Origin: Malacoraja senta
Lineage: Eukaryota
Length of the DNA: 39,121 nucleotides
Reading direction: 5' to 3'
Assembly: GCA_038087875.1 (NCBI GenBank)
Contig: JAXLNO010004702.1
Location: 1 to 39,121 of the forward strand
In this document: in pieces, positions 10,216 to 33,564 of the stretch
How the letters are laid out: each line of letters starts with the position of its first letter
Numbering within the stretch: the stretch's first letter is position 1
The notes under the pieces: model-generated
Seen by the model: only the letters and a program-made list of their open reading frames with translations
Database searches by the model: none
What the model was told of the DNA's origin: nothing
Translations under genes and position numbers: made by a program

Positions 10216-10267
10216 ATGCTTCTTTTTACCTTACTGAACACTTACGGTGTGGCCACTGTCTCCTCTG
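10216..10267 (+). CDS. MHC class I-like exon 1 (signal peptide MLLFTLLNTYGVATVSS-D)
   Basis: 17 codons plus 1 nt, then the strong donor G|GTAAGC at 10268. Phase 1 joins AT of exon 2 to give Asp1. Lies directly downstream of the SXY module. Confidence 0.8.
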
Positions 10268-10570
10268 GTAAGCAATACTGCTTCAACCTGTGAACTTTGA
10301 GGAAACAACAAAACTGATTATATTTACTGTTGCACAGTGCCTGTGTTTGCCCTGGGTTCATTGTCTTGGATGTATTAATTGAATGATTGAATTGAATGTA
10401 TTAATAATTTTGGGTAACGGTCTTTCCTTAGTTGTAAAGGCTCCTGTGGGAAGTTATATATACTATGGTTACCTTGGCAATCCATTGAACAGAAGAACTG
10501 AATACATGTAAATAATGAACATAGAACATAGTACAATACAGCACAGGAGCAGGTCCTTCAGTCCTTCAGT

Positions 10571-10598
10571 CTGAAGAAGGGTCTCGACCCGAAACGTC
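10571..10598 (+). ncRNA. Minimal type-I hammerhead ribozyme motif in a Penelope-like terminal repeat (best copy)
   Basis: CTGAAGA core, extra A, helix II GGGT-CTCG-ACCC, GAAAC, GTC cleavage triplet. Helix III is the palindromic ACGT. Helix I is only ~2 bp (GT/AC). Confidence 0.6.
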
Positions 10599-10659
10599 AC
10601 CCGTTCCTTTTCTCCAGAGATGCTGCCTGACCCGCTGTTACCTCAGCATTTTGTCTACC

Positions 10660-11060
10660 TTCGGCCCACAATGTCTGTGCCGAACAAACTAAACTAATCT
10701 CCTCTACCTGTATGTGATCTGTATCCGGCCATTCCCTGCCTATCTATGTACCTATCTAAAAGCCTCTGAAATGTAACTGTTATATCTGCCACCATCACCA
10801 CAACCACCACTGGCAGCGCGTTACAGATGTCCACCACCCTCCACATAAAACAACTTGCTCCGCTCATCTCCTTTGAACATTGCTTCTCCAACCTTAAAGT
10901 GATGTTCTCTGGTCTTCAACATTTCCACCCTGGGAAAAAGGTTCTGGCTGTCCACTCTGTCTGTGCCTCTCACCATGTTGTGCACTTTCATCAGGTCTCC
11001 CTTCAACGTCCAGTATACAAGAGAAAACAATCCATGTTTGTCCAATCTGTCCTTGCACTA
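10660..11060 (-). mobile_element. CR1 3' fragment
   Basis: Minus ORFs contain LKGDLMKVHNMVRGTDRVDSQNLFPRVEMLKTREH. Confidence 0.75.
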
Positions 11061-11699
11061 ATGCCTCAGACAGAATTCAGGTGATGTGCACTTTCAATAA
11101 AGAAGTGACTTCTGCATTAGTAGGTGTTCCACCTCTCCAAGATTTCCTCAGCTGGTGTTAGACACCCACATGATGGTAAAATTCAGCCTGCATTAAATGA
11201 CCAATCAATGTTGTGTTAATGTTGTTGCCATCTTGTTGTTTGTTGCATGCTTCCTGTCCTGCAGACCCTATCCATTACCCCATCACCACTTCCCCAGAAG
11301 ACGATAATGAGATTTAAGAAGCTTGAGGATAGGCACGTGGATATGCAGGGAATTGAGGGATATGAATCATCTACAAGCATGAAGAGTTTAGTTGAACTTG
11401 ACATCATGTTCGGCACAGACATTGTGGCCGAACTCCAGCCCATTACACCCTTAATGAACAAAAATCTATCAATCTCAATCTGGAAATTTTCAAGTGGGCA
11501 ACATATTCAACAGATTACAGAATCGAGAACCAGAGGACATAGGTTTAAATTGAGGGGGGAAAGATTGAATGGGAATCTGATGAGCAATTTCTTCCCACAC
11601 AATGGTACCTTTCTAACTATTCTGACATTCGTCAAGGCTTGGAGATTACAAACCTACTCGTCCTGAAAGTTTCATCCCATTGTTATCAAATGAAAGTAA

Positions 11700-12640
11700 A
11701 TATAATGGTGTTAAAGAAGGAACTGCAGATGCTGGAAAATCGAAGGTACACAAAAATGCTGGAGAAACTCAGCGGGTGCAGCAGCATCTATGGAGCGAAG
11801 GAAATAGGCAACGTTTCGGGCCGAAACCATATAATGGTGATGGCCATGTTGAAATAATAACATATAAAACAAAAATCCTCGGCTGTGGAGTGTTTTGCGA
11901 AGCCACATGGATTTTATCGTTACTGTATTCCACTCTTAGCCGTCTTATGTTTCTCCTGGTAACACTGAAACAGACACTTCTAACTCTGCCCTCGGGGCCC
12001 CTTCTCACTTCACTTAAACACATGAACTTTGACACTGTCTGGTGTGCTGCATGTAATCTTTATCACAGAACAAATACTGCTTATGCATGTGGAAACAAGA
12101 AACTGCACATGCTGGTTAATACACATAAAATACTGGAGTAATTCAGCAGGTCAGGCAGTATGTCTGGAGAACATGGTTAGGTGATGTTTCAGTTGACACA
12201 AGTGTAGGAAGGAAGTGCAGATGTGTAAGAAGGAACTGCAGAAGCTGATTTAAACCGAAGATAGACAATAAAGCTGGAGTAACTCAGCGGCACAGGCAGC
12301 ATCCCTAGAGAGAAGGTATGGGTGACGTTTCGGGTCGAGACCCTTCTTCTGACTGCTGATGCAGATGCTGGTTTACACCGAAGATAGATACAAAAGGCTG
12401 GAGTAACTCAGCAAGTCAGGCAGCATCGCTGGAGAAAAGGAATAGGTGGAGTTTCAGGTCAAGACACTGCATCAGACAGAGTCGGGGGTGCATATATTTC
12501 ATTGTACTTTGTCATATCTCTCGGTTCTCTGTCCCCTGACTCTCATTCTGAAGAAGGGTCTCGACACGAAACGTCACCTTTTCCTTTTCTCCGGAGATGC
12601 TGCCTGACCCACTGAGTTACTCCAGTATTTTGTGTCGAGT
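11700..12640. mobile_element. Cluster of Penelope-like terminal repeat fragments in both orientations
   Basis: Repeated AAGGAACTGCAGATGCTGG / GCTGGAGTAACTCAGC..GGCAGCATC blocks. Hammerhead-like motifs at 12324-12351 (-) and 12548-12575 (+). Confidence 0.7.
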
Positions 12641-13012
12641 TTCAATTTAGGCCCTGTTTATCTCAGTCTCCACCACCCCCCCCCCATCTCTATGAGCTGT
12701 GTTGCAGCTGCCTATGAGGACCTGGACTCAATCCTGATCTCTTACAACCTGGCTTTTTTTTCCCCCTGCAAACGTGTGTTTGCTATGGTTATTCCAGTTT
12801 CCCCGCACGTCCCCAAAATGCCGGGCTGAAAGGTAAATTGGCCAGTGTGAATTGGTCATGCATATGTATTAGAATTGGTGGAGGGGATGAGGGAGGTGTT
12901 AATGGGAGATTGGCAAATATTAAAAGGGTTAGCGTACCACAGGTATAAATAGGTGTTTGATGGTCACCACGAACTTGGTGGGCTAAAGGGCCTTTTATGT
13001 GCTGTACCCAGT

Positions 13013-13144
13013 GGACATAAGTTTAAGATGAGGGGGGAATGATTTAATAGGAACCTGAGGCATAGCATTGTTACACAAAGGGTGGTGGGTGTACTGAATG
13101 AACTGCCGGAGAAGGTAGTTCAGGCGCGTACTATCACGACATTT
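13013..13144 (+). mobile_element. Left part of the CR1 fragment split by the L1 (continues at 19753-~20000)
   Basis: GGTGGTGGGTGTACTGAATGAACTGCCGGAGAAGGTAG joins across the TSD to GACATTTAAGAATCATTTAATCAGGTACATGGATAGG. Confidence 0.8.
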
Positions 13145-13555
13145 TTTTTTAATTTTTTTTTTTAAATAATTTTTTTAATAGAAGTACGGTAGATTACAGT
13201 AATGTACAACACGTATATATTAATACATTTTTTGTACCGCTTCACTTTTTTAAACTTTAAGAAAGAAAAAGAAAGAAGTAAGAAAAGTGAAGAAAGTGCG
13301 CAAAGGTTGTGAAGTGCAAAAGAGTGTTGGGAAAAGAAAGCCCCTTAGAAAAGAAGTTAGAGAAGGAAGTAAAGTTAGAAAATAGACCCTAGAAAAGAAA
13401 GAGAAAGAAAGAAGGAACAATCGCTCTATTATAACTCTTATAACATACTTCATAGAGAAGGAACTACCAACCAAGTCTGTTTTTGTTTTACCTCCCATTA
13501 CCAGGTCCAGATACCTTTTATTTATTTATTTGTTTTTCTAAATTACTATTGCACC

Positions 13556-16500
13556 TCATGCTTGTAATAGGTCCAAAAACGTAGACCACGTCTTTTGAAA
13601 TTGGTCTACTTTGCCTACTAGGAGGAATCTCATCTCTTCCAGATGTAATGTTTCCAACATATTTGATGTCCACATTTTTATTGTTGGTGTGGGCGCATTT
13701 TTCCAGAATTTAAGTATAAGCTTTTTTCCCATTATTAGCCCATAATTGAGTAAATTCTTCTGATACACGTTTAATTCAGGAATACCTTCCGATATTCCAA
13801 AAATAATCCATTCTGGTTTTGGTACCAGTTTTATTTTGATTAATTTTGAAAAAATATCAAATATTTCAAACCAGAATTTTTGGATTTTTGTACAAAAAAC
13901 AAAATAATGTGCTATGGTAGCTTCTTGACATATACATTTATCACAGATTGGTGAGACGTTAGGAAAGATTTTATTTAGTTTGGTTTTTGAATAATATAAT
14001 CTATGTAATGTTTTAAATTGGATAAGCGTATGTCGTACGTTGATCGAGCATTTATGCACCTGTAATAAATGATTATCCCAACTCTCTTTTGAAATTTTTA
14101 TACCTAGATCTTGTTCCCAATCTCTTCTAATTCCATCTGTTGTGGGTATTTCTATGTTTAAGATGATATTATATAAGTATGATATTAAATTAACTGATTC
14201 CGCCTTTGTCTTCATTGCTTCATCTAGTAAGTCGGAAGGCATATTATAATAATCTTTTGTGTGTGTTTTCAAATAGTCACAGATTTGTAGATATTTAAAA
14301 TATTGATTCTTTTTCAAATTATATTTCAGTTGTAGTTGTTGAAATGATAGTAATTTTTCTAATTCATACAGATCTTCGAGCGTTTTGATTCCCATTCTTT
14401 CCCATTGTATAAATGATTTATCTATGATTGAAGGTTTAAACGATGGGTTATTGACTATTGGTATTAAGAGAGATAGGTTTCTTAATTTTAGATTCTGTTT
14501 TATTTGCTTCCATGTTCTAATAGTGGTATATATGATTGGATTTTTATTATAATTTTTATTATTCAAATTTATTGGAGAGAGAATAATCGCTCCTATATTA
14601 TTCGGGGAGCAATCCCCTTTTTCCATTATAATCCAGTCCACCTGCTGGGCAGAATTGTCCAGCAGGTGAATCATATTTTTAATATTTACTGCCCAGTTAT
14701 AATACATAAAGTTAGGGAGCGCTAGACCCCCCAACTCTTTTCGTTTGTTAAGGTGTGTTCTTTGTATTCTGTGGGATTTGTAATCCCATATAAAATTTGT
14801 AATGTCTGAGTCCAGTTTTTTGAAAAACTTTTTTGGGAGATATATAGGTATTGATTGAAATAGGTAAAGGATTTGTGGTAAGAAAATCATTTTTATAGCA
14901 TTTATCCTACCTATTAAGGACATCGGAAGTGTTTTCCAAAATTTAATCAAATTATTTAATTTCTTAAGTAGGGGATTATAATTAGCTTTAAACATATCAT
15001 GGTAATTTCTAGTAATCTCAATTCCTAAATATTTGAATTTTTCCATAGCTATTTTAAAAGGGAATTTCCTGAGATGTGTTGAGTCTTTTGGTTTAATCGA
15101 CATAATTTCACTTTTGTTCCAATTTATTCTATATCCTGAAAAGGATCCAAAGTCCTCAATTAAGTTTAATATATTTGGTATACTAATTTGTGGTTTTGTG
15201 ATGTACAGTAGTACATCATCAGCATATAGGGATAGTTTGTTGTTTGAATATTTTGTGTTATAACCGTGAATATTCGAGTGTGTTCTTATTTTTTCAGCAA
15301 GGGGTTCAATTACCAAAGCAAATAACAGCGGTGATAGTGAACATCCTTGTCTGTTGCCCCTAGATAATTCGAATTTTGAAGATAATATATTATTAGTTAG
15401 TATTCTAGCCGTAGGTTTGTTATATAGTAGTTTTATCCATGCAATAAAGTTTTCTCCCAATTGGAATTTTTGCAATACTTTGATCATATAGTCCCATTCT
15501 ACTTGATCAAACGCTTTTTCTGCGTCCAGTGAGATGATAGCTAACTCTTGGTCATAAGATTTATGTGAATGCATTATGTTAAGCAAACGTCTCAAATTAT
15601 TAAATGAGTGTCTCTTAGGTATAAATCCTGTTTGATCCTCATGTATTAGTCTACTAACATACTTGCTTAATCTATTGGCTAATGTTTTTGCTATTATTTT
15701 CTGATCCGTATTTAACAAAGCAATAGCTCTATATGATCCTGGTTCTTCTATATTTTTATCTTTTTTAAGTATTAATATGATCGTTGATTCCGCTAGTGTT
15801 TCAGGTAGGTTTTGCACTTTATAAGCATATGTATAATTTTTTTGTAATCGTGGAGTAACTATATCATAAAAAGATTTATAAAATTCATTACTGAATCCGT
15901 CTGGTCCTGGTGTTTTTCCATTTTTTAGTGTTTTTATTGTGTCTTCTATCTCCTTAGAAGTAATTTGTGCTCCCAGTTCCTCTTGTTCCCTGCGTTCTAA
16001 TTGTGGTAGATTACAATTATCTAAAAATTCTGAGATTTTATTATTGTCTATTGACGTTTTAGATGTGTATAGATTCTGGTAAAATTGAGCAAATCTTTTA
16101 TTAATATCCTTGGGTAGTGTTAATACTTCCCCTCTATCTGATTTAATCTTTAATATTGCATTCTCTTTTTCCCGTTTTTTAAGTTGTCGTGCTAGAAGTT
16201 TGTGGGGTTTGTCCCCGAATTCGAAGTGTTCTTGTTTTGTGATTTGAAATAATGTTATAACTTTCTCTGACAGTAATTTATTTAACTGAAATTTCAGTAG
16301 TAGTATTTTATTATGTTTATCCATAGTTGGGTCTTTAGCATTATCTATATCTAACTGTTTTATTTGATCTTCTAAGTATCTTTGTTCATTCTTATTCTTT
16401 TTATTTTGATAAGCTTGAAATGAAATAATGACTCCTCTTATAAATGCTTTGAAGGATTCCCATAATAACGTGGGGGATATCTCTGGTGTATCATTTAACT

Positions 16501-17347
16501 CAAAAAATAGATCCATCTGTTTTTTTAGATAGATACTCCCTTGAGGGTCTTTTAAAATTTGTGAGTTAAACCTCCAGAACGGTTTATTCATAGACATTCC
16601 TTCTAGTTTTAGAACAAAAGTTAACGGAGAATGATCTGAGATCGTATTAATATGATATTTAGGATTCAGAGATTGCGGAATTAATTTTGTATCCACAAGA
16701 AAATAGTCTATCCGTGAATATGTTTTATGCACCATTGAATAAAACGAGTAATCCCTTCCCGTCGGGTTTGCAATCCTCCATACATCTGTTATATTTGTGT
16801 TTTCCATATATGTGTGTAAGAGTTCACTGGTTTTAGATTTCGTCTGACCTTTTTGTTTTTGCATCGATTTATCTAAATAAGGATCTAAAACACAATTAAA
16901 ATCTCCTCCGATTATAACATTTTGATAATTAGATTCTGCAATTATATTCAGAATTTTATTAAAAAATTGAGGGTTATCAAAGTTGGGCGCATATATGTTT
17001 ACCAGCGTAATTGGCATATTATTGATCTCCCCTGCTACTATAAGATATCTCCCTTCCTTATCTAAAATAGTGTTCTTTGATTTAAATGGAATTCCTTTAC
17101 GAATAATAATTGCAGTACCTCTAGATTTGGAGGTAAATGAAGAGTGAAATGTTTGGCCTATCCAGTTCGCCCTCAGTCTTGTCTGATCTTGCTGTTTAAG
17201 ATGTGTTTCCTGTAGAAACGCAATGTCCGTGTTGTATGATTTCAACTGAGCTAGTATCTTGCCCCTTTTAATAGGTTCATTAATCCCCCTTATATTCCAA
17301 CTACATAATGTGATTCCTCCTATTTTCTTTTGATTGTCGTCATGCAT
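13556..17347 (-). CDS. L1 ORF2p (APE endonuclease, reverse transcriptase, C-terminal Cys/His domain), 1263 aa
   Basis: SWNIRG, LQETH, GGDFN, SDHSP, PGPDG, LDAEKAFD, RQGCSLSP, YADD, KYLG, CDKC..H....C; no interruptions. Confidence 0.97.
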   Translation of the reverse strand: MHDDNQKKIGGITLCSWNIRGINEPIKRGKILAQLKSYNTDIAFLQETHLKQQDQTRLRANWIGQTFHSSFTSKSRGTAIIIRKGIPFKSKNTILDKEGRYLIVAGEINNMPITLVNIYAPNFDNPQFFNKILNIIAESNYQNVIIGGDFNCVLDPYLDKSMQKQKGQTKSKTSELLHTYMENTNITDVWRIANPTGRDYSFYSMVHKTYSRIDYFLVDTKLIPQSLNPKYHINTISDHSPLTFVLKLEGMSMNKPFWRFNSQILKDPQGSIYLKKQMDLFFELNDTPEISPTLLWESFKAFIRGVIISFQAYQNKKNKNEQRYLEDQIKQLDIDNAKDPTMDKHNKILLLKFQLNKLLSEKVITLFQITKQEHFEFGDKPHKLLARQLKKREKENAILKIKSDRGEVLTLPKDINKRFAQFYQNLYTSKTSIDNNKISEFLDNCNLPQLERREQEELGAQITSKEIEDTIKTLKNGKTPGPDGFSNEFYKSFYDIVTPRLQKNYTYAYKVQNLPETLAESTIILILKKDKNIEEPGSYRAIALLNTDQKIIAKTLANRLSKYVSRLIHEDQTGFIPKRHSFNNLRRLLNIMHSHKSYDQELAIISLDAEKAFDQVEWDYMIKVLQKFQLGENFIAWIKLLYNKPTARILTNNILSSKFELSRGNRQGCSLSPLLFALVIEPLAEKIRTHSNIHGYNTKYSNNKLSLYADDVLLYITKPQISIPNILNLIEDFGSFSGYRINWNKSEIMSIKPKDSTHLRKFPFKIAMEKFKYLGIEITRNYHDMFKANYNPLLKKLNNLIKFWKTLPMSLIGRINAIKMIFLPQILYLFQSIPIYLPKKFFKKLDSDITNFIWDYKSHRIQRTHLNKRKELGGLALPNFMYYNWAVNIKNMIHLLDNSAQQVDWIIMEKGDCSPNNIGAIILSPINLNNKNYNKNPIIYTTIRTWKQIKQNLKLRNLSLLIPIVNNPSFKPSIIDKSFIQWERMGIKTLEDLYELEKLLSFQQLQLKYNLKKNQYFKYLQICDYLKTHTKDYYNMPSDLLDEAMKTKAESVNLISYLYNIILNIEIPTTDGIRRDWEQDLGIKISKESWDNHLLQVHKCSINVRHTLIQFKTLHRLYYSKTKLNKIFPNVSPICDKCICQEATIAHYFVFCTKIQKFWFEIFDIFSKLIKIKLVPKPEWIIFGISEGIPELNVYQKNLLNYGLIMGKKLILKFWKNAPTPTIKMWTSNMLETLHLEEMRFLLVGKVDQFQKTWSTFLDLLQA

Positions 17348-17744
17348 TTTTACCAGTTTTAATGACCTTAATTATTATGGTGCGTTCATACCTCCGGACT
17401 CTGGTTATTTTGGGAGTATTTCTATTATAGACTTCCTTGGTAGTTCTCCTGCGCGATTGTCCTTGAAGAAAAAACACACAGATGTGACATATTGTGATTA
17501 AAAAAAATATATATAAATCAAATAAATTTACGGTGTCTAAAATTTCAACACCGTAGTGAGTGGCCCACTCGTCTGTGGGGTACGACATCCATAACGCTTC
17601 CGGCGTAGTTGGTATAAAGTTAGCCCCGCTGTATTTATTACCCAAAATCTATGGGGTCATTACCGTTTCCAATTCAGTTCTATTTCACCCAGTTACAATT
17701 TATATATATGTCAAATGTATTCGATTCCATATCCTACTCACTCT

Positions 17745-18335
17745 TTATCTCTTAACTATTTTAAAATGAATTTAGTATTGTTAAAGTGAGCGGTTTACTG
17801 AGTGGATTAACCGGAGTCAGGTTCCTGGAATTGTGCCAGGTGCCTGATCTCCTCTCCTCTCCACGAGCTGCGAACATATGTGATAACTGCTGTCTGCGTT
17901 ATGACGCAGGCACCACAGTTTTATCAGTTTCAAATATTATTTCTATATTAGTATTGTTAATTATTAATTATGATTAATTCTCAGCATTTTGTAAAACTAT
18001 ATAAGCCGTATATATTTTTCATACCAACCTCGAGTGTATATTATCTCTTAACTATTTTAAATTGGTTTTAATATTGTTAAAAATGAGCTGTTCGCTGGAA
18101 GGGTTAACGGGAGTCTGGCTCCTGGAGTTATGCCAGGTACCCGGTCTCCCCCTCCCTCCACTCTCGAGCTGCATAGCACTTGCTGTTATCTGCTAAACAG
18201 AGCAGGCTGCACATTTTGTATCTATTTCAATTGCTATTTCTATATTAGTATTGTTAATTATTAATTATTATTAGTTCTGTTTTTTCAGTTTTTTATAAAC
18301 AATACAAGCCATGTGATGTTTTTCACTCTCAGCCC
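17745..18335. repeat. Diverged 296-bp tandem duplication in the L1 inter-ORF spacer
   Basis: TTATCTCTTAACTATTTTAAA at 17745 and 18041, and TTTCTATATTAGTATTGTTAATTATTAATTA in both units. Confidence 0.85.
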
Positions 18336-18563
18336 AGCAGTTCGTCCCGTGTTATCAGGTTTTCCTCGTTTGAGCACGTAGTGTCCTTGAATTACATAGC
18401 ACAATGTTCCAGCGAAGATAATAATGTCTAGCCACGTCTCACTAAGAATCTGTTGCTTGAAGTCAAATAAAAAATAAAAAATCAGTGTTCAGTTAATTCA
18501 CTTTCCTTGTGATACTCTTGTTGGGAGAATAAGCAAGTTCGTTTGTTCATGTCGTCTTGGTTT

Positions 18564-19559
18564 TCAATCTCCAGTTGATGCAGCCTTAGTCGCGATTTCT
18601 TGAGCGTATTTGAGAGATTCATTCGAATTAGTGAATGTTTTTGACACTCCCTCAAAGGTAATACGCATTCTAGCCGGATAGAACACTCCACACAAAACTC
18701 CCTTAACACCATAAAGAACTTCTCTGGTCTGTGAGAACTTTCTTCTCTTTTGCTCAATCTCATAAGGGTAGTCCCGTAGGAGTTTAATAGTATCACCTCT
18801 GTACATCATCTTCTCTCCGTGGTTGATTTTTTTCATCAGCGCTTCCATTGTTGAGATATCCCGAGGTTTAATTATGATCTGTCGTGGGTAGGCATGTTCT
18901 CCTTGAGATCTTGATTTAAATCTGGGGAGTCGATGTGCTACTTCAATTACAGGTACTTCTGGTAGCTTCAGTACGTGTTTAATTAGGTTGGCAGCGAACT
19001 CACAAACATTGTCCCCCTCAGCTCCCTCTTTTACACCACGTATTCTTATATTTTGACGTCTTGAGCGAGCTTCTAGGTCAACACATTTATTCGAAACCTT
19101 TGTGACTTGGTTCTTGAGACTATCTATTTCTGACTTCATAGTCTGCATCTCTCCAGCCATCACTTCCACAGCAGCTTCCAAATCTTTCACTGCAGATGCA
19201 TTTGCAGCCACAGTTTCGTGCACAGCCTCAAACATCTTTGTGGTCTCTTCTGCCAGCTTTTCAATTTTTATCGATAATCCTTTTTCCACACCTTCAATTC
19301 TTTTTTGGAGAGCCTCAATACCCTCAAGTATTTTATCATTACCGGCCATCAATTTACTGTTCCCAGCTTCCATATCATTTTTGATATCTCTTACCGAGTT
19401 TCTTAAGTCCTCCATTTCGGCTTTCTCTTTTGCAGATCGAGTAGCCATTCCAGAGACCTCTCCAGAGGTCAGTTCTGAAGTTTCTTGCTGTTCCAGAGTC
19501 TTCAGCAGATGTTTTGAGATTTTCCTCTGTGGGCTCTGACCTGGAGATGTACTTTTCAT
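18564..19559 (-). CDS. L1 ORF1p (coiled coil, RRM, CTD), 331 aa
   Basis: Heptad-rich N-terminal half, then DLEARSRRQNIRIRGVKEG, AHRL, PRQIII and FYPARMRI. Confidence 0.95.
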   Translation of the reverse strand: MKSTSPGQSPQRKISKHLLKTLEQQETSELTSGEVSGMATRSAKEKAEMEDLRNSVRDIKNDMEAGNSKLMAGNDKILEGIEALQKRIEGVEKGLSIKIEKLAEETTKMFEAVHETVAANASAVKDLEAAVEVMAGEMQTMKSEIDSLKNQVTKVSNKCVDLEARSRRQNIRIRGVKEGAEGDNVCEFAANLIKHVLKLPEVPVIEVAHRLPRFKSRSQGEHAYPRQIIIKPRDISTMEALMKKINHGEKMMYRGDTIKLLRDYPYEIEQKRRKFSQTREVLYGVKGVLCGVFYPARMRITFEGVSKTFTNSNESLKYAQEIATKAASTGD

Positions 19560-19752
19560 TTAAAATGACTTTCCCTCCGTTAAAATCGCGGCGCTTACTG
19601 ATGACGTCATCAGCACCGCGACATGAAGCTCCGGTAAGTTTTTAAAAACGGTCCCGACCTCCAGACCCGATTTTAACGCGAAAAAACGCGTTTTTTTCAG
19701 CGGAGCTAAAAAGTTTGCGACTGCTAACAGAGCATGACGCAACCGGAAGATC
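19560..19752 (-). promoter_or_regulatory. L1 5'UTR / internal promoter, CpG-rich
   Basis: 193 nt with many CpGs. 16-bp palindromes CTGATGACGTCATCAG (19598-19613, containing the CRE TGACGTCA) and AAAAAACGCGTTTTTT (19681-19696). ETS-like CTTCCGG at the 5' end. Confidence 0.7.
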
Positions 19753-20820: not shown

Positions 20821-21081
20821 ATTTACACCATCTTGCATTTTACTACCTGTTGAACCATGGATTGAATGAGCTGCCTGAGTACAGTATGGTAGCAATGCTG
20901 GATGACGTCCAGATAGCATATTTTGACAGCACACTAGAGCGGGCTGTTCCCAGACAGCGATGGATGGCCCAGTCTTTCCCGCAGGATCACTGGGATTCAA
21001 TGGCCATCACAGTTGCAGGTTTTCATGGGATTGTCAGAGGAAATGCTGAGATAGTCTACCAACAGCAACATGGTATCTCGA
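20821..21081 (+). CDS. MHC class I-like exon 2 (alpha1)
   Basis: ttgcag|ATTTACAC...TCGA|gtaagt; 261 nt, phase 1-1. Encodes DLHHLAFYY...LPEYSMVAMLDDVQIAYFDS...VPRQRWM...HWD, a typical class I alpha1. Confidence 0.93.
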
Positions 21082-21179
21082 GTAAGTGTCGTGAGCGGAC
21101 CTGGGGTAGACACTCAGTGATGACACAGATGGATTTTGTTTTAGTTTTATTGTTGACACATGATTCTCTGATACACTTT

Positions 21180-21760: not shown

Positions 21761-22825
21761 TGTTTCAGACATTTACTCCATAACATTTTGATAGAGACAC
21801 GGCCCATCGTCTATATTTAATGTGTCCTAACTGCTGAACACACAGTCATAACAGTTGGCTGGTGATAGTCTCTTTATGGGTTAAGCATTTGATATTCAAC
21901 ACCAGTAATAAGTGGAAGGATTGGATCATCTGTTTTGTTGGGCTGGAATGAGGGAGAAACCATTAGTTTATTTATAGCCTGATCATCTAGAGATGGGATC
22001 TTGATTTAAGCTGGTTGATGGTGACTATGAGGTATTCCCTCAGTAATAATATTGTGTTAATCCAGCATCCCCTCAATATTGGCAACAATCCTCAGAGGGT
22101 GTAGCAATCCCACACAGTGCAACAGCCTTGATGTACTTCCCATCTGCATTGCCTTAACCTTCAGACTGACCTGTTGGCTCTGTAGCATTGCCCATCTGAC
22201 AATGCACTTCTTCCTCTGTTCTTTATGTACGACAGTGCAGAATCTGAGTTCCACCCTTCTGACACAGCAGAACTCCTTTAGTGTTACATCCGCAACAGTA
22301 AAGCTCCCCCCCATAACACTTGAGGTTAGTCCATGCACTCAGTATATAGACCAAGGGTCATTGAGTTACACATCATGGAAACCGGCCCTTCTGCTCACTG
22401 AATCCACATTGATCATCCATTGTGCTAAGATGGAGTCACAGCAAACTGCAGATGCTGCCAATCTGAATTTAAAACAAACAGGAGGAACTCAACGAGTCAG
22501 GCAGCATGCTGTGGAAAAATGGACAGAAAACATATGAGACCAGGACCATTTAGAGTGATGGGGTAGAGTGGAGAAAGCTGGAAAAGAAAAGTAGTCTGTG
22601 TAGGATAGTGTTAATATGCGGGGACCACTGGTCGGTGCGGACTCGGTGGGCCGAAGGGCCTGTTTCCGCGCTGTATCTCTGAGCTAAACCTGCTCCTGTG
22701 CTGTACAGCTCCATGTTGTGTTCTGTTATGCCTGTTTGTACCATGCTGAGAACTGATTTGTAAATTGCCTCTCCCTTCCATCCACTCTCCCCAACACAAA
22801 TCCTCCACCCCTACCTCAGCCCCAG

Positions 22826-23101
22826 CTGTTTGCTTTGTGCAGGGTTTCTGCGGCTGTGAAGTGGACAGTGACAATTCCACTGATGGGTTTGTCAGACTGG
22901 GTTATGATGGGGAGGATGCCTGTGCTTTTGACAAGGACAGAATGCGCTGGATTGCACTACGTCCAGATTTCCAGATGCTAGCAGATCGGTGGAACGTCAA
23001 CACCTTCATGAACAAGTATTTTAAAGATCTCCTGGAGAAGAACTGTGTGAAGTGGCTGCGGATATATCTGGAGTGTGGACAAGAAGCACTACAGAGGAGA
23101 G
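22826..23101 (+). CDS. MHC class I-like exon 3 (alpha2)
   Basis: ccccag|CTGTTTGC...AGAG|gtacac; 276 nt, phase 1-1. Encodes VCFVQGFCGCEV...GYDGED..AFD...RW...RWN...CVKWLRIYLECG with canonical C101/C164. Confidence 0.93.
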
Positions 23102-23199
23102 GTACACGACGTAGGCACTCTGACTGATGGGCCAGAGGATATCCTCTGGATAGATCAGGTGGGAAATATCATGCACTTCAGGCTGTCACTTGAGTAATT

Positions 23200-23492
23200 A
23201 TTTAGTTTAGTTTAGAGATACAGCGCGGAAACCCACCGAGACCGCACCGAGCAGCCATGCCCGCACACTAACACTATCCTACACACACTAGGGACAATTT
23301 GCATTTATACCAATCCAATTAACCTACAAATTTGTACGTCTTTCGAGTGTGAGGGGAAACCGAAGATCTCGGATAAAACCCACGCAGGTCACAGGGAGAA
23401 CGTACAAACTCTGTAAAGACAAGCACCCGTAGTTAGTAACAAACCCAGGTCTCTGGCGCTGTAAGGCAGTAGCTCGACCGCTTCGCCACCCT
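23200..23492 (-). mobile_element. V-SINE (HE1-like)
   Basis: Same family as 6897-7208, with a TTTAG-type tail at the left. Confidence 0.8.
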
Positions 23493-24305
23493 GTTCTACA
23501 ACGTGGGTATCAGTAAATTGTCTGGCAACGTGCCTCTTAGATGGAACCAGTGGGTAGGAAGTGCAAGTGAAAGATAAATATTGTACCAGTGTCCTTTATC
23601 CACAGTCATATAGATATTCAGGAAATGGAGGAATATGTATCTTGGTCTTATGTTTAGCACCGACCTTGTGGCCTGAAGGGTCTGTTGCTGAACTGATCAG
23701 AAACCCAATCAGATTCTCTATTTGCCTCTATTACTCCTTGGGATGGTGACATTCAATTTCCAACAGTTCTCTATTTGAAGAACTTCTTCCTCCCATTCCC
23801 TCTTGGAATATTTAGTGTTATTATTCAGCAGAGATTCATGAACAGGTAGAAGCAATCATGTCTACAGTATCAATCCCAATGGTGAGTTATACTCCTCCAT
23901 TGGGCCTGCATTCCCCTTTCATCTGTGCTGTCAGTTAAAGCCTGGAGCTAAGATAAGGAGCATGTCAGTGATATTAAAGCTAAATGTTTTGTTGTTTTGC
24001 CAGAAATGCAAAATGAAAAGAGAAAAGGCTGTAAACTTTGTGCAAGATAGAACTGCAGATGATGGTTTACACTGAAGATAGAAGATGTTGGTGTAACTCA
24101 GTGGGTCAGATAGCATCTCTGGGCATTCCTTCTCTCCAGAATGCTGCCTGACCTGCTGAGTTATTCCAGCATTTTGGGTCTAGGCTGAAAACTTAGTTCA
24201 GCCAGAGAAAAAACTCTGATTGGGAAAGTGGTGAGTTGCAGTGATCTTACAATTGAAGGCTTTTGTTCATGTCTTCACTGATTCTGACTCTTCTTACACT
24301 TGCAG

Positions 24306-24578
24306 AAACCCCTGAGGTGTTTATTGGGATTAAACGCGATGGGTCGCAATCACTGAGACTCTCCTGCCTTGTCACAGGCTTCTAGCCACGGGCCATCGAT
24401 GTAACGTGGCTGAGAGATGGTGAGGGGGTCCATGAGTCTGAATCCAGTGATCTGTTGCCCAATTGGGATGGGACTTACCAGCTGAAGAATACAATTCAAC
24501 TGAATAGAGAAGATGTGGCAAAATTCTCCTGTTACATCGAACATGCAACTCTGCTGCAGGGAGTCAATGTTCCACAGG
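24306..24578 (+). CDS. MHC class I-like exon 4 (alpha3, C1-set Ig) with in-frame TAG at 24383-24385
   Basis: ttgcag|AAACCCCT...CAGG|gtaagt; 273 nt, phase 1-1. Encodes ETPEVF...LSCLVTGF*PRAIDVTWLRDG...LLPNWDGTYQL...FSCYIEH. Confidence 0.92.
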
Positions 24579-24679
24579 GTAAGTGGCAAGTCAATGAGGC
24601 TGATCACTTGAGACCATAAACCTCCTGGACTGAGATAACAGTCTCAACTCACACTCTTAACTAAGCTGTGGATTTAGAC

Positions 24680-27080: not shown

Positions 27081-28925
27081 ATTAAGTTCAAGACAATGGG
27101 GCTGTACATTGGCCATAAGGTTGCTGCCTAAAAGTGCCAGAGACCTGGAATTGATCCTGAATATGGGTGTTGTCTGTTTGGAGTTTGCTCCTTTTCACTT
27201 TGATCGCATGGGTTTTCTTCGGGTGCTCTTGTTTCCTTCCACATTCCAAAGGTGTGCAGGAACCTATTTCAGAACCAACCCTAAACGTAATATTTCCCTT
27301 TTGTCCAGAGATTCTGTCTGACCTGTTGAGTTACTCCAGCTTTGTGTGTCTATCTTCAGTTTAAACCAGCATCTGCAGTTCCTTCCTACACACACGATAC
27401 TATACGATAGAACTTTATTAATCCCAGGAGGGAAATTGTGTGTGTGTGCGTGTGGGTATATATACTATGCACACACACACACACACACATATATATATAC
27501 AATACAATTACAATACAATTTTATTTGTCTTTTGGACAAATTTGTCATTTGGACCCCGTTGAGGTCTAAACGAAATGTCGTTTCTGCAGCCATACATTAC
27601 AAAACGAAGAAGACCCGAGACACAACACAATTTACACATATATCCATCACAGCGCTGTGATGGAAGGCAAAAAAACGTATCTCTCCACTGCACTCCCCCC
27701 CCCACCCCCCCGATGTCAGAGTCAAAGTCAAAGCCCCCGGCGGGCGATGGTGATTATCCCGCGGCCATTAAAGCCACGCCGGTTAATGCAGGGTCGCGCA
27801 CCGCGTCTTGGTGTTAGAGCCCCGGCGCGCGCTCGCAAAGTCCGGCGGCCATTCCAAGCCGCGCGGGGCGGTGATGTAAAGCCCCCCTCCAGGTGCTCTT
27901 CAACCCCGCAACTCGGGCGGGAGAAGTCGCCGCTGCGGATGCCCCGAAAAGCGGTGTCCCACCAGGGGACCCACGGGCTTCCGGTGTTGCCGTCCGCCAG
28001 ACCCGCGGTTGTAGCCTCCGAATCTCCGGGGGTCGGGTAGCAGCAGCGATTGTCTCCACCACAGCTATAAATATACACCGTTTTGTTTTCTCGTTTATAA
28101 CATTGTTTACAGAGTACTATGTTTACATATTCTGTTGTGCTGCTGCAAGTAAGGATTTCATTGTTCTAACTGGGACGTGAGAGAATAAACTCTTGACTCT
28201 TGACTTACTTCGCTAATGTGTGGGAAAGAACTAGTGTACGGGTGATCAATAGTCGGCGTGGACTCGGAGGGCTGAAGGGCCTGTTTCCACGCTGTATCTT
28301 CAAATTAAGCTAAAGACACTAAAACCAGAGGGAGTCTAAAGAAGTGTTTCTACCCGAAACGTCACCCAATTTCTTCTATCCTGAGTTGCTGGCTGCTCCA
28401 TGGAGTTCCCCCGCACAATTAAAGCATGGAATAGTCTTCACCCTACCATAGTTACCCAACCAGACGCAACTAAATTTAAGGTACCTCTTTTTTCCCCAAG
28501 AACCCTTTTTTGCTTAAGTCCAAGTCAAGAGTCAAGAGAGTTTTATTGTCATGTGTCCCAGATAGGACAATGAAATTCTTGCTTGCTGCAGCACAACATA
28601 ATATGTGAACATAATACAGAACAGGAGATAAAAGTTCAGTGTGTTTATATACCATAGACCATATATATACACAATAAATAAACAGATAAAATGCAATAGG
28701 CTGTTATTGTTCAGCCCTCTACCACCTCCAGTTTAAATTCCTTTTAGAATATTTATGGAGGATCAGGAAACCAGAAGCGAGAGTTACTCCAGGGAGATAC
28801 TCCTGATCCAGGGTCAGGGAGTGATTCTGTGTTAGTTTTCAGCGGTTGCGGCGAGGCAGCAATGGCGGCCAAATCTCCCACAATTCAAAGCGAGGGAGAA
28901 AGTGCCCAGCGCCGACCAGTTGCCG

Positions 28926-29030
28926 TGGCAGTGCGCATGCGCAGGGCGGCCGATGACGTGCGGGCTGTGGTTGTGCGCATGTGCAGGGGAGGACGTGCTG
29001 GCTGTCGCAGTGCGCATGTACAAGGCGGCC
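28926..29030. promoter_or_regulatory. Three ~40-bp tandem units each with an NRF1-type site, in a CpG-rich subterminal region of the hAT element
   Basis: TGCGCATGCGCA 28932-28943, TGCGCATGTGCA 28974-28985, TGCGCATGTACA 29011-29022, with GACGTG between them. Confidence 0.55.
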
Positions 29031-30630
29031 GGCCGTGCCGGCGGATGAGGAGCGAGCGGAGAACGGAGACCCGGACACGGAGAGTGACAGACGGAGATAG
29101 AGATAGAGAGGGGGGCCGCCCCGCCCAGAGTTGAACGGCTGGTGTCCTGCCTTGGCCGGAGGCCCCCTATATTTCAGGGCCCCAGGCTTCAGCCTATGAA
29201 GCCTAGTGGTAAATCCGGCTCTGCGAGCCCCTCCTAGATCTCCAGGCCCTAAACTGAAGCTTGTCCATCTTATATGTAAATCCGGCCCTGCCTACCAGAT
29301 AATGAAATGCCTGGTTAGTTGATGGGAAAGGAAGTTTTCAGTAATGGGAGAGTCTAGCACAGCCTCACAATAAAAATACCTACCTTCAATATGGAGATGA
29401 GGAGGAATCTCTTTAGTCACAGGGTGGTGAATCTGTGGAATTCATTGATACAAACAGCTGTGTGGGTCAAGTCATTGCATATTTTTCAAGCAGAGATTGA
29501 TAGGTTCTTGATGAGTACGGGTGACAAAGGTTACAGGGAGAAGGCTAGAGAATGGGATTTAGCGGTAAAAAAATAGATCTGCTATGACTGAATGGTGGAG
29601 TAGACTCAATGGACTTGAAAGGCATAATTCCGCTCCAATATCTTATGGTCAAAATTATTCTTATGTCACCCTTAACTCACCCATCCAAATGTAGGAACAG
29701 TGGAAGCAAGATAGGCTGATCCTGGACAAGGTCTCTTATCTTCTTCCTTGGGCATCTAGCTAATTTTCTGATAGTAGCTAGTTACACAAAAGATGTCTGG
29801 TGCCATATTATCAGGCTGAAGTAGCAGCACCTGTTCTGGAGCTGACTTATTTGTTCCAGACAAGACCTCTGCAAAGATCTTCACACCAGGGCCAAGCTGA
29901 CATGGTTAAGATTGCTGGTCAGTACAAATAGACAGTAGTGTTAATGTCTGTGTGTGCCTATGTGTGTGTGAGACAGTGAGGGGGAGAGAGAGAGAAAGAG
30001 AGAGCATGTGTATGTGAGAAAATTAAACTCAGATATCATTGAAATATCAGCAAAGATTAAAACCTTTGAAGTTTTATCAACTATAAATGGGTTCACTCTT
30101 ATTTGCTATAATAACAATCAACATAAGAAAATGGCCTTGTTGACCTCTACACTGTAAATAGTCATATATTTCTGACGTACTTGATTCTTTAAATTCTTAA
30201 TTAAATGCTGCAGATAAAATCTCAATACCTCAATGCTAATATGAACTTAATGATTTTTCATTGATCATTTTAAGCACATCCATCCTCTGTATAAATACTT
30301 AAATCTAAAACGTTATTACTTTTTAATTAGATATGAACAGTGCTACTTTAATTTAGATAATAAAATCATTATAATGTTGTTATTGATCACTAAATGTTTA
30401 AAATGCACTATACAGTGGCTTGCAAAAGTTTTCATACCCCTTGAACTTTTCCACATTTTGTCACGTTACAACCACAAACGTAAATGTATTTTATTGGGAT
30501 TTTATGTGATAGACCAACACAAAGTGGTGCATAATTGTGAAGTGGAAGGAAAATGATACATGGTTTTCAAATTTTGTTACAAATAAAAAACTGAAAAGTG
30601 TCGCGTGCAAAAGTATTCAGCCCCCCTGAG

Positions 30631-31652
30631 TCAATACTTTGTAGAACCACCTTTCGCTGCAATTACAGCTGCAAGTCTTTTGGGGTATATCTCTACCAGC
30701 TTTGCACATCTAGAGACTGAAATTTTTGCCCATTCTTCTTTGCAAAATAGCTCAAGCTCAGTCAGATTGGATGGAGAGCATCTGTGAACAGCAATTTTCA
30801 AGTCTTGCCAGAGATTCTCAATTGGATTTAGGTCTGGACTTTGACTGGGCCATTCTAACACATGAATACGCTTTGATCTAAACCATTCCATTGTACCTCT
30901 GGCTGTATGTTTAGGGTCGTTGTCCTGCTGGAAGGTGAACTTCCGCCCCGGTCTCAAGTCTTTTGCAGACTCTAACAGGTTTTCTTCCAAGATTGCCCTG
31001 TATTTGGCTCCATCCATCTTCCCCCATCAACTCTGACCAGCTTCCCTGTCCCTGCTGAAGAAAAGCATCCCCACAGCATAATGCTGCCACCACCATGTTT
31101 CACAGTGGGGATGGTGTGTTCAGGGTGATGTGCAGTGTTAGGTTTCCGCCACACATAGCGTTTTGCATTTAGGCCAAAAACTTCAATTTTGGTCTCATCT
31201 GACCAGAGCACCTTCCTCCACATGTTTGCTGTGTCCCCCACATGGCTTGTGGCAAACTGCAAACGGGACTTCTTATGGGCTTTTTTCAACAATGGCTTTC
31301 TTCTTGCCACTCTTCCATAAAGGCCCGATTTGTGGAGTGCACGACTAATAGTTTTCCTGTGGACAGATTCTCCCACCTGAGCTGTGGATCTCTGCAGCTC
31401 CTCCAGAGTTACCATGGGCCTCTTGGCTGCTTCTCTGATCAATGCTCTCCTTGCCCGGCCTGTCAGTTTAGGTGGACGGCCATGTCTTGGTAGGTTTGCA
31501 GTTGTGCCATACTCTTTCCATTTTCGGATGATGGATTGAACAGTGCTCCGTGAGATGTTCAAAGCTTGGGATATTTATTTATAACCTAACCCTGTTTTAA
31601 ACTTCTCCACAACTTTATCCCTGACCTGTCTGGTGTGTTCCTTTGGCTTCAT
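30631..31652 (-). pseudogene. Tc1 transposase (DD34E), inactivated
   Basis: ATG at 31652 (MKPKEHTRQVRDKVVE). [15 protein letters not shown] and [11 protein letters not shown] are present. TAA at 31575-31577 and a frameshift in a G-run near 31020. Confidence 0.92.
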
Positions 31653-31733
31653 GATGTTGTTTGTTCACTAATGTTCTCTAACAAACCTCTGAGGCCTTCA
31701 CAGAACAGCTGTATTTATACTGAGATTAGATTA

Positions 31734-32086
31734 ATAATAATAATAATAATAATGGATGGGATTTATATAGCGCCTTTCTAATACTCGGCGCTTTACATCG
31801 CATTATTCATTCACTCCTCAGTCACACTCAGTGGTGGTGAGCTACTTCTGTAGCCACAGCTGCCCTGGGGCAGACTGACGGAAGCGTGGCTGCTAATCTG
31901 CGCCTACGGCCCCTCCGACCACCACCAATCACTCACACACATTCACACACATTCACACGCAGGCAAAGGTGGGTGAAGTGTCTTGCCCAAGGACACAACG
32001 ACAGTATGCACTCCAAGCGGGATTCGAACCGGCTACCTTCCGGTTGCCAGCCGAACACTTAGCCCATTGCGCCATCTGTCGTCCCG
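31734..32086 (-). mobile_element. tRNA-derived CORE-type SINE (AFC-like) with L2-type 3' stem-loop tail, nested in the Tc1
   Basis: Head has A/B boxes (TGGCGCAATGG, GGTTCGAATCC). CORE-like GTGTCCTTGGGCAAGACACTTCACCC. Tail TGTAAAGCGCC..GAAAGGCGCTATATAAAT plus (ATT)n. TSD AGATTA at 31728-31733 and 32087-32092 (or GAGATTA). Confidence 0.85.
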
Positions 32087-32403
32087 AGATTACACACAAG
32101 TGGACTCTATTTACTAATAAGGTGACTTCTGAAGGCAATTGGTTGCACTGGATTTTATTTAGGGGTATCAGAGTAAAGGGGGCTGAATATTTTCGCACGT
32201 GACACTTTTCAGTTTTTTATTTGTAAAAAAATTTGAAAACCATGTATAATTTTCCTTCCACTTCACAATTATGTGCCACTTTATGTTGGTCTATCACATA
32301 AAATCCCAATAAAATACATTTACGCTTGTGGTTGTAACGTGACAAAATGTGGAAAAGTTCAAGGGGTATGAATACTTTTGCAAGCCACTGTATATGCCAA
32401 CAG

Positions 32404-32537
32404 AGAGGGCAGTGAAAGAAGATATGAAGATTAGGATCGTGACTGGAGCTGTAATTGTTCCTCTCATTCTCCTGGGGATCATCCTTGGAATTGGTTGCTG
32501 GAAGAAGAGGAAAAAGAGAAAACCTTTCAATGAACAG
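32404..32537 (+). CDS. MHC class I-like exon 5 (connecting peptide, TM, basic stop-transfer); may read through to TGA at 32624
   Basis: ccaacag|AGAGG; phase 1 continues the frame ERAVKEDMKIR-IVTGAVIVPLILLGIILGIGCW-KKRKKRKPFNEQ. Candidate donor CAG|GTACCA at 32538. Confidence 0.8.
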
Positions 32538-32591
32538 GTACCAGCTGACAACAGCAGAGACCAGGAGAGGACCATGAAGCACAATCAGCTT

Positions 32592-33075
32592 CCTTTGGGA
32601 TGCAGAGGAGGTCTACCGGAATGATGCCTGGATTAGTGGGGTATTAGCCACAGGGAGAAGTTGGACAGACTGGACAGTTGGATTGTTTTCTCTGGAATGT
32701 CGGGGATTGAGGGGAGACCTGACAGTAATATATCAAACTGGGAGGAGTAGAGATAGGGTAGACCATCAGACTTTTTACCCAGGAAGGAAATATCAAATAA
32801 GAGCAGGTATTGCTTTACAATGAGTGGCAAAGTTAAAAAAAGATGTGCAGGACAAGTGTTTTACGCCAAGGGTGGTGAGTGACTGGAATGTGCTGCTGGA
32901 GGTGGTGGTGGAAGCAGATATGATAGTGGCATTTAAGAGACTTTTAGATAGGCACATGTATATGCAGGGAATGGATGGATATGGATTATGTGCAAGCAGA
33001 TAACAATTGGTCTTGGCATCATGTTCGGCACAAACATTGTGGGTCAAAGGGCCTGTTCTTGTGCTGTACTGTTCT
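32592..33075 (+). mobile_element. CR1 3' fragment
   Basis: GATGCAGAGGAGGTCTACCGGAATGATGCCTGGATT...GAGAAGTTGGACAGACTGG corresponds to the CR1 RVQRRFTRMxPGL region. Confidence 0.75.
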
Positions 33076-33517
33076 ATGCTCTTTATTGTATCAATGCTGA
33101 CTGATGACTTTACATTCAGCCATTAATTTTTCAAATGCTGTCTTCACTGCAGTTACCCTGTGATTCCAAAGTCATACATTGCGCCACATTTTGGAATAAA
33201 AGGTCGCCTATTTGATTGATTGATACTTTATTATCACATGTGACATGTCACAGTGAAATTCTTTGCTTTGCATAACATACACAAGGTATACATACACAAG
33301 TCACCATGTATAGGGTGTCGACACAGTTACAAAGTAATCATTACAGTCCCCAATGGTCCCACTTTGTTCTCGGCAGCCCCTCCATGTTGGGTTCACCTGT
33401 GTTATCCGCGCCCCCTCCCCCCCCAACCCCGGGACCCTCTTTGTTATCTTTGTTCTCGGCAGTCCTCCCATGTTGGGTCCCTCTTTAAAATAGTTACGAA
33501 GAAGATTTATTTTCCAG

Positions 33518-33564
33518 GAGGTGTATGATTTGCCTGAACTTTCTATTCCAGCTGTGAAGACAAG
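33518..33564 (+). CDS. Probable cytoplasmic exon 6 (EVYDLPELSIPAVKT)
   Basis: ttattttccag|GAGGTG...ACAAG|gtgaat; 47 nt. Entry phase 0 matches the donor at 32537, the frame is open, and no repeat is recognised in the exon. Confidence 0.55.

What the first reader, a model, noticed from the sequence alone, without database searches (positions are those of the whole stretch)
10216..33564. Highly divergent nonclassical MHC class I-like gene with a rebuilt, apolar groove
Seen: five phase-compatible exons give a class I heavy chain. By manual alignment (HLA-A2 numbering) the peptide-terminus anchors read Y7F, Y59H, Y/R84Q, T143L, K146R, Y159L and Y123A, with only W147 and Y171 kept. The N86 glycan site is lost (H) and an NST sequon appears in alpha2 (DNSTD). 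The alpha1 helix SMAITVAGFHGIVRGNAEIV is small and apolar. Established: loss of these residues marks nonclassical class I, CD1/EPCR bind lipids in apolar grooves, and several nonclassical lineages are known in cartilaginous fish. Inference: a non-peptide (possibly lipid) presenting molecule whose lineage I cannot assign.
Basis: partly seen in the sequence, partly recalled or inferred. Interest (0 to 1): 0.75.

Follow-up and report, generated by a model that had tools for sequence, protein, structure and literature searches.

The report
Dead skate copy, UGA-sister class I
This is a real MHC class I-like gene of a skate with a greasy groove that has lost its peptide anchors, but this copy is switched off by a stop codon. 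It belongs to an old shark-and-ray gene lineage next to the lipid-type "UGA" gene, so it is not a lineage of its own.

Summary
Five GT-AG, phase-1 exons (leader, alpha1, alpha2, alpha3, TM/tail) give a 363-codon class I heavy chain.

Two things change the reading.

1. The gene carries one in-frame TAG at 24383-24385, replacing the Tyr of the alpha3 GFYP motif. The TAG is also in contigs of two independent runs that differ from the assembly at five other sites. So it is a real lesion: this copy is a pseudogene or null allele.

2. The lineage can be assigned. The gene nests (100/100) in a lineage found in every shark and ray genome that yielded a hit, usually as one copy, which NCBI auto-names "MR1-like". 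That lineage is sister (95/95) to UGA, whose structure is PDB 9CH4, at about 39% identity. It lies about 42 kb upstream of UGA in sawfish and little skate.

In skates the lineage has at least three diverged copies, and two of them are broken.

Across the lineage the helices are more apolar than in UGA or classical class I, and alpha1/alpha2 are more conserved than alpha3. This fits an invariant, non-peptide, probably lipid-like ligand, which is inferred rather than shown.

Earlier notes of this scan already reported the same lineage, intact and dead, on other pieces of this genome. No RNA data were found.

The parts
10216..10267 (+). Leader exon (ATG..G|gtaagc, ends in phase 1)
   Evidence: The sequence was read. 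The peptide MLLFTLLNTYGVATVSS aligns with the leaders of the Pristiophorus and Heptranchias orthologues. It is 90% identical to L001.
20821..21084 (+). Alpha1 exon (264 nt)
   Evidence: Pfam MHC_I. The best PDB match is 9CH4 (UGA), E 1.5e-22. It is 96.6% identical to the L. erinacea copy L001.
22820..23101 (+). Alpha2 exon (282 nt), with the Cys101-Cys164 pair, the DNST sequon and an extra Cys at HLA-equivalent position 99
   Evidence: Pfam MHC_I, E 6.9e-16. PDB hits. Splice sites. Alignments.
24306..24578 (+). Alpha3 (C1-set Ig) exon, 273 nt, interrupted by a stop
   Evidence: The exon runs from cag|AA.. to CAGG|gtaagt.
24383..24385 (+). In-frame TAG replacing the Tyr (TAC) of the GFYP motif
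   Evidence: L001 has TAC here, and every orthologue has Y; the contigs of runs X1 and X2 across 24234-24614 differ from the window only at 24337, so they also carry TAG.
32404..32624 (+). Transmembrane and cytoplasmic-tail exon, ending in TGA
   Evidence: Acceptor acag|AG in phase 1. The peptide ERAVKEDMKIRIVTGAVIVPLILLG.. aligns with P0001 and with the Pristis tail.
30409..32394 (-). Tc1/mariner insertion in intron 4. It has 224-nt inverted ends and a frameshifted transposase, and it ends about 10 nt before the TM exon.
   Evidence: Inverted repeat found. Transposase ORFs. The element is absent from L001: the window breakpoints 30412/32388 join directly there.

Best explanation
The window holds one copy of an old nonclassical MHC class I heavy-chain gene of sharks and rays. 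The lineage is the tandem neighbour and sister of UGA, and NCBI's pipeline labels it "MR1-like".

Inferred function of intact relatives: a beta2m-associated, single-pass membrane protein. Its groove has lost the peptide-terminus anchors, is lined by small and apolar residues, and is held almost constant between species. It therefore most likely displays one invariant non-peptide, lipid-like ligand to an innate-like lymphocyte receptor.

Shown for this copy: it cannot do that. A TAC->TAG change ends translation inside alpha3, before the second Ig cysteine and 193 nt upstream of the last exon junction.

Inferred consequences: the mRNA would be a target of nonsense-mediated decay, and any product would lack a folded alpha3, the membrane anchor and beta2m binding.

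This is a recently disabled duplicate, or a null allele, within a skate-specific expansion of the lineage.
For: Gene and lesion:
- Exon structure, domains and the single stop.
- The stop is not an assembly slip. Runs X1 and X2 carry TAG while differing from the assembly at five fixed sites within 4 kb, and in X1 the whole depth over the stop comes from one TAG-bearing contig.

Lineage:
- 12 orthologues at 54-72% identity, one full-length per species except Pristiophorus (which also has a partial second protein, P0181), then a drop to 36% or less.
- Careful ML tree: window+P0001 100/100, lineage 100/100, UGA lineage 100/100, the two as sisters 95/95, and a batoid/shark split inside both.
- 9CH4 is titled "shark nonclassical MHC class I, UGA". 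It is roughly 90% identical, read off the printed alignment, to the lineage-B protein of Stegostoma, but only 37-39% identical to the model of lineage A.

Synteny:
- The lineage-A gene lies about 42 kb upstream of UGA on the same strand in Pristis. There it sits inside the MHC-Ib cluster between BRD2/B2M and COL11A2/RXRB.
- The same arrangement is found on L. erinacea scaffold 384.

Groove:
- The anchors are lost.
- Mean hydropathy of the alpha1/alpha2 helices is +0.38/-0.32, against -0.37/-0.97 in UGA and -0.50/-1.07 in UAA-like sequences.
- 43-46% of alpha1/alpha2 columns are invariant, against 29% in alpha3.

Duplication in skates:
- The window, L001 and L003 are colinear and mostly 84-92% identical, introns included.
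- L003 has a stop at the Cys164 codon and no alpha1 or TM exon.
- dN/dS between window and L001 is 0.50, against 0.22 to Pristis.
Against: - No RNA run was found, so neither silence nor nonsense-mediated decay is shown.
- Apart from the stop, the copy is barely decayed. The only other window-specific change at a lineage-invariant column (Asp->Asn at 23041) is contradicted by all reads. The stop is therefore young and could still be segregating.
- The contigs used drop rare variants, so a minority TAC allele cannot be excluded.
- The substitution counts per branch (4 synonymous / 11 non-synonymous against 4/8) are too small to show relaxed constraint on this copy specifically.
- The ligand is pure inference. 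No groove volume could be measured, because the tools return no coordinates. The report that UGA binds lipid is a personal communication cited in a review (PMC12562908).
Confidence: 0.8

Rival explanations
1. The gene is functional in the species. The TAG would then be an assembly error or a rare null allele carried by the sequenced animal.
For: The rest of the reading frame is clean. Every splice site is intact and only the stop hits an invariant residue. One other assembly base (23041) disagrees with all reads.
Against: Two runs from other samples, which differ from the assembly at five sites, both carry TAG. In X1 no alternative contig covers the site. A Tc1 element has also landed about 10 nt from the TM acceptor.
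Confidence: 0.12
2. The lineage binds no lipid. Either its small-residue helices close the groove, making a ligand-less recognition or transport molecule like FcRn, HFE or ZAG, or it holds a small metabolite as MR1 does.
For: - The alpha1 helix is rich in Ala, Gly, Ser and Thr, which can let helices pack together.
- Alpha2 alone scores best against MR1 (E 1.9e-16).
- A Cys invariant across the lineage at floor position 99 could hold a ligand covalently.
Against: - MR1's Schiff-base Lys43 aligns with Ala.
- Over the whole chain, unfused MR1 scores no better than carp or shark classical class I (142 against 144 and 139 bits).
- The nearest relative is UGA, which is reported as lipid-binding.
Confidence: 0.3
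3. The gene founds a new, unassignable class I lineage, or is a divergent classical UAA gene.
For: No name for the lineage was found in the papers available.
Against: It nests with 100/100 support among 12 annotated orthologues. It lies far from the UAA-type P0187, whose best PDB hit is 6LUP at 335 bits. The anchors are not restored by any alignment.
Confidence: 0.03

Closest known systems
UGA, shark and ray nonclassical MHC class I (PDB 9CH4)
   Same: - Sister clade, 95/95, and tandem neighbour on the chromosome.
- Shared motifs AGFHG(I/L)(V/I)(K/R)G in the alpha1 helix and MNxYFKxLLEKDC in the alpha2 helix.
- Same losses of R84, T143 and Y159.
- Best structural and sequence match in the PDB.
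   Different: - Only 37-39% identical, and both genes coexist in each species.
- UGA keeps Y7, Y59, K146 and the N86 glycan site. This lineage has F7, H59 and R146, no N86 site, a DNST sequon in alpha2 and a Cys at position 99.
- Its helices are more apolar and its alpha1/alpha2 far more conserved.
Leucoraja erinacea XP_055486430.1, "MR1-like, partial" (P0001, locus L001)
   Same: - 92% amino-acid identity over alpha1-alpha3.
- The loci are colinear at 88-92% DNA identity, with the same exon structure.
   Different: P0001 has TAC (Tyr) where the window has TAG. It lacks the Tc1 element and the LINE insertion. It is a diverged duplicate or an orthologue, not the same locus.
Classical class I UAA (PDB 6LUP) and UDA
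   Same: Same fold, same exon plan, both disulfides, W147 and Y171.
   Different: Six of the eight termini anchors are replaced. The gene lies in a separate clade. UDA is described as keeping 8 of 9 anchors; this is my recollection of Almeida et al. 2020, a paper that is not held.
MR1 and CD1 of tetrapods
   Same: A monomorphic-looking, conserved, non-peptide type groove. His at position 59 and the WMA..DHW stretch resemble MR1.
   Different: There is no Lys43 and no special whole-chain similarity to MR1. The only CD1 sequence tried (lemur CD1b) sat on a very long branch outside the clade. Orthology was not tested.

Membership tests
MHC class I heavy chain | Alpha1/alpha2 MHC_I domain plus a C1-set alpha3 domain | tested here: met
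   Pfam PF00129 (E 6.9e-16 on alpha2, 1.8e-5 on alpha1) and PF07654 (E 6.5e-9). The AF2 model of the near-identical P0001 has pLDDT 86 and matches class I chains at Z 25-27.
MHC class I heavy chain | One domain per exon, with phase-1 junctions, Cys101-Cys164 and the alpha3 Cys pair | tested here: met
   All junctions are GT-AG in phase 1. The landmarks GCE..EKNC and LSCLV..FSCYI are present.
MHC class I heavy chain | Intact open reading frame | tested here: not met
   TAG at 24383-24385, confirmed in runs X1 and X2.
Classical peptide-presenting class I (UAA type) | Conserved peptide-terminus anchors Y7, Y59, Y/R84, T143, K146, W147, Y159, Y171 | tested here: not met
   The window has F, H, Q, L, R, W, L, Y, so only 2 of 8 are kept. 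The same pattern holds across the whole lineage.
UGA lineage (9CH4) | Falls inside the clade of 9CH4-type sequences | tested here: not met
   It is sister to that clade, not inside it. Both clades have 100/100 support. Identity to 9CH4 is 37-39% for lineage A, against roughly 90% for a true UGA orthologue.
UGA-sister lineage ("MR1-like" of NCBI) | Clusters with the one-per-species orthologue set and shares its invariant residues | tested here: met
   100/100 support. Of 105 columns invariant in the non-skate orthologues, the window departs alone only at the stop and at one base that the reads dispute.
UGA-sister lineage ("MR1-like" of NCBI) | Position directly upstream of UGA in the MHC-Ib cluster | not testable with these tools
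   The window ends 6.5 kb after the gene and holds no other class I exon. The arrangement is met in Pristis and on L. erinacea scaffold 384.
MR1 | Lys43 forming a Schiff base with the ligand | tested here: not met
   The HMMER alignment to MR1 places Ala opposite Lys43.
CD1 / lipid-presenting class I | Deep hydrophobic pockets holding acyl chains | not testable with these tools
   Only helix hydropathy could be measured. No coordinates are returned, so pocket volume is unknown.

The most novel reading that the evidence does not exclude
The UGA-sister lineage is a third, still unnamed antigen-presenting lineage of cartilaginous fish. It would have its own invariant ligand, held in an unusually apolar groove whose floor carries a free cysteine at position 99 that is invariant across the lineage (possibly a covalent ligand hook). 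Skates alone have turned this otherwise mostly one-per-species gene into a small birth-and-death family, of which this window is a freshly killed member.
Probability: 0.2. Interest if true: 0.65.

Novelty: new member of a known kind. Interest (0 to 1): 0.35.

Why it matters
CD1-like, non-peptide presentation in cartilaginous fish bears on whether lipid or metabolite presentation is as old as peptide presentation. The lineage this gene belongs to is conserved across sharks and rays, and its binding domains are more conserved than its Ig domain. That makes its intact members good targets for ligand hunting. This particular copy adds only two points. First, skates have duplicated the gene and are losing copies. 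Second, the stop is recent. The lineage is already annotated in public genomes, and other windows of this same scan have already flagged it.

Tried and rejected
- Literature. Searches for 9CH4, UFA/UGA, UHA and CD1-like shark genes found no primary paper. The two J Immunol papers on UDA and UEA are not held.
- RNA evidence. Both run searches returned only runs that cover introns and exons evenly, so expression could not be tested.
- Special kinship with MR1. I considered this because alpha2 and whole-chain phmmer rank MR1 high. I rejected it as unsupported: the high scores come from beta2m-fused chains, unfused MR1 equals carp and shark classical class I, and Lys43 is absent.
- Tree with MR1, CD1 or PROCR. 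No MR1 sequence was available by reference, so this tree was left out rather than typing sequences in.
- Species of the window. It could not be fixed. The public L. erinacea copies L001 and L003 are each about 10-12% diverged from the window, and run organisms are coded.
- Other genes in the window. A search for other class I exons found none.
- Protein atlas. The search gave only a generic class I result.
- 8GM8. Its title was not retrieved, so calling the third lineage (P0021) UFA rests on earlier notes only.
Full report
**What is there.** The + strand between 10.2 and 32.6 kb carries five exons with GT-AG borders, all joined in phase 1:
- leader 10216-10267
- alpha1 20821-21084
- alpha2 22820-23101
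- alpha3 24306-24578
- TM plus tail 32404-32624

Spliced, they give 1092 nt in frame. Pfam finds MHC_I on alpha1 (E 1.8e-5) and alpha2 (E 6.9e-16), and C1-set on alpha3 (E 6.5e-9). The tails of the orthologues align with simple read-through of the TM exon to the TGA at 32622-32624.

I aligned the gene with a shark classical-type protein (P0187, best PDB hit 6LUP at 335 bits) and a carp U-lineage protein.
- The substitutions Y7F, Y59H, R84Q, T143L, K146R, Y159L and Y123A are reproduced exactly, with W147 and Y171 kept.
- The 86-88 sequon is gone.

The HLA numbering rests on conserved landmarks and on my own knowledge of HLA-A2.

**The stop.** There is exactly one in-frame stop, TAG at 24383-24385. 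It stands where every relative has the Tyr of GFYP, and the closest public copy has TAC.
- Contigs of two runs from other samples (X1, X2) cover introns and exons evenly. They differ from the window at five fixed positions within 4 kb.
- Across 24234-24614 they differ only at 24337, so they also carry TAG.
- In X1 the whole depth over the stop comes from that one contig.

The stop is therefore real and not private to the assembled haplotype. It lies 193 nt upstream of the last exon junction. By the usual rule this would trigger nonsense-mediated decay, which is an inference. Any product would lack the second Ig cysteine, the TM segment and beta2m binding. A Tc1 element (224-nt inverted ends at 30409-30632 and 32171-32394, transposase frameshifted) ends about 10 nt before the TM exon and is absent from the sister copy. 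It may disturb the branch point, but that is untested. No RNA run was found.

**Which lineage.**
- An all-against-all HMMER search with alpha1 gave one 95% hit, L. erinacea XP_055486430.1 (\"MR1-like, partial\").
- Searching with that protein gave, in 11 further shark and ray species, one full-length orthologue each at 54-72% identity. Pristiophorus has a partial second protein as well. The species are Pristis, Mobula, Hypanus, Pristiophorus, Heptranchias, Scyliorhinus, Stegostoma, Hemiscyllium, Mustelus, Cetorhinus and Chiloscyllium. After them identity drops to 36% or less.
- In a careful ML tree of 53 proteins, the window pairs with the L. erinacea protein (100/100) inside a batoid subclade (99/98) of this lineage (100/100).
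- A second lineage of 19 shark and ray proteins is also 100/100, and the two are sisters (95/95). Both show the shark/batoid split, so the duplication predates that split.
- The second lineage is UGA. PDB 9CH4 is titled \"shark nonclassical MHC class I, UGA\". It is roughly 90% identical to the Stegostoma member of that lineage, whereas lineage-A proteins match it at 37-39%.
- A third type (P0021) matches PDB 8GM8. Earlier notes call it UFA, but I did not verify that name.

**Synteny.** In the sawfish the orthologue (LOC127585976) lies in the MHC-Ib cluster between BRD2/B2M and COL11A2/RXRB. [quoted passage not shown] That first one encodes the UGA protein P0262, and Pristis has three UGA-lineage proteins in all (supplement of PMC10751288). 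On L. erinacea scaffold 384 the same order and spacing hold. The window itself holds no other class I exon.

**Skate-specific duplication.**
- The window and locus L001 are colinear from 10.1 to 39 kb at 88-92% identity in introns and 93-96% in exons.
- A third L. erinacea locus (L003) is 84-90% identical. It has a stop at the Cys164 codon and no alpha1 or TM exon within 10 kb, although it is annotated as a protein.
- Run X1 also holds minor contigs about 7% diverged from the window, so one animal carries more than one copy.
- dN/dS between the window and L001 is 0.50 over the ectodomain, against 0.22 for either versus sawfish. Polarised counts are 4 synonymous / 11 non-synonymous on the window branch and 4/8 on the other. 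These are too few to separate the branches.
- Among 105 columns invariant in the non-skate orthologues, the window departs alone only at the stop and at Asp->Asn (23041). All four runs read G there, which restores Asp.

So the inactivation is young.

**What the lineage probably does (inference).**
- Mean Kyte-Doolittle hydropathy of the alpha1 and alpha2 helices is +0.38 and -0.32 in this lineage. It is -0.37 and -0.97 in UGA, and -0.50 and -1.07 in UAA-like proteins. There are also fewer charged residues.
- 43% of alpha1 and 46% of alpha2 columns are invariant across 13 sequences, against 29% of alpha3. UGA shows the opposite pattern.
- A Cys at HLA-equivalent floor position 99 is invariant, and in sharks it has no conserved partner.

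This is the signature of a monomorphic molecule with one conserved ligand or receptor. Because the sister UGA is reported (as a personal communication in PMC12562908) to bind CD1d-type lipids, a lipid-like ligand is the most likely reading. A closed groove or a small metabolite remains possible. MR1's Lys43 aligns with Ala, and unfused MR1 scores no better than fish classical class I, so the \"MR1-like\" label is automatic naming only. Groove volume could not be measured.

**Verdict.** This is a correct gene call and a correct residue analysis, applied to a dead copy of a lineage that is already annotated. Earlier notes of this scan had already described the same UGA-sister lineage, both intact and disabled, on other pieces of this genome. 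I checked independently the name UGA, the sister relationship and the stop.

Noticed in passing
window 13556-19559 (- strand), intron 1: A LINE with an uninterrupted 1263-aa endonuclease/reverse-transcriptase ORF (13556-17347) and an upstream 331-aa coiled-coil, ORF1-like ORF (18564-19559). The homologous intron of L001 lacks it, so it may be a young, possibly still active element.
   Followed up: partly
window 30409-32394: A Tc1/mariner copy with 224-nt inverted ends (94% complementary) and a transposase split by a frameshift. It is inserted about 10 nt upstream of the TM exon acceptor and is absent from L001.
   Followed up: partly
window 23041: The assembly has A here (Asn in EKNC). All four runs laid, including two of the same organism, read G (Asp), which is the lineage-invariant residue. 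This is either an assembly error or a rare allele.
   Followed up: partly
L003 11716-11994 (L. erinacea JAMYXN010000412.1): A third skate copy has a stop at the Cys164 codon of alpha2 and no alpha1 or TM exon nearby. It is nevertheless annotated as a 263-aa protein (P0182), so the public model is probably a pseudogene artefact.
   Followed up: partly
L001 about 12983-13020; window 23102-23140: The public model P0001 inserts 12 residues (GTRPRHSDWWNG) between alpha2 and alpha3 by using a downstream donor, although the canonical donor is intact. No orthologue has the insert, and in the window that extension contains a TGA.
   Followed up: partly
window 22846-22851 (Cys codon at HLA-equivalent position 99): The motif xCGCE carries a cysteine two residues before the disulfide Cys101. 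It is invariant in all 13 members of the lineage and absent from UGA (which has F). It should point into the groove floor.
   Followed up: partly
window 22576-22709, 23112-23513, 24050-24183: Intron stretches with summed contig depth 1,000 to 10,000 times that of their neighbours in three runs of two coded organisms (X1-X3), and about 100 times in the shallow run X6. These are very high-copy interspersed repeats shared among the organisms sampled.
   Followed up: no
proteins P0152, P0155, P0267 (L. erinacea LOC129716032): Public isoforms fuse the skate UGA gene to a downstream GPR139-like receptor. These are probably read-through gene models rather than real proteins.
   Followed up: no
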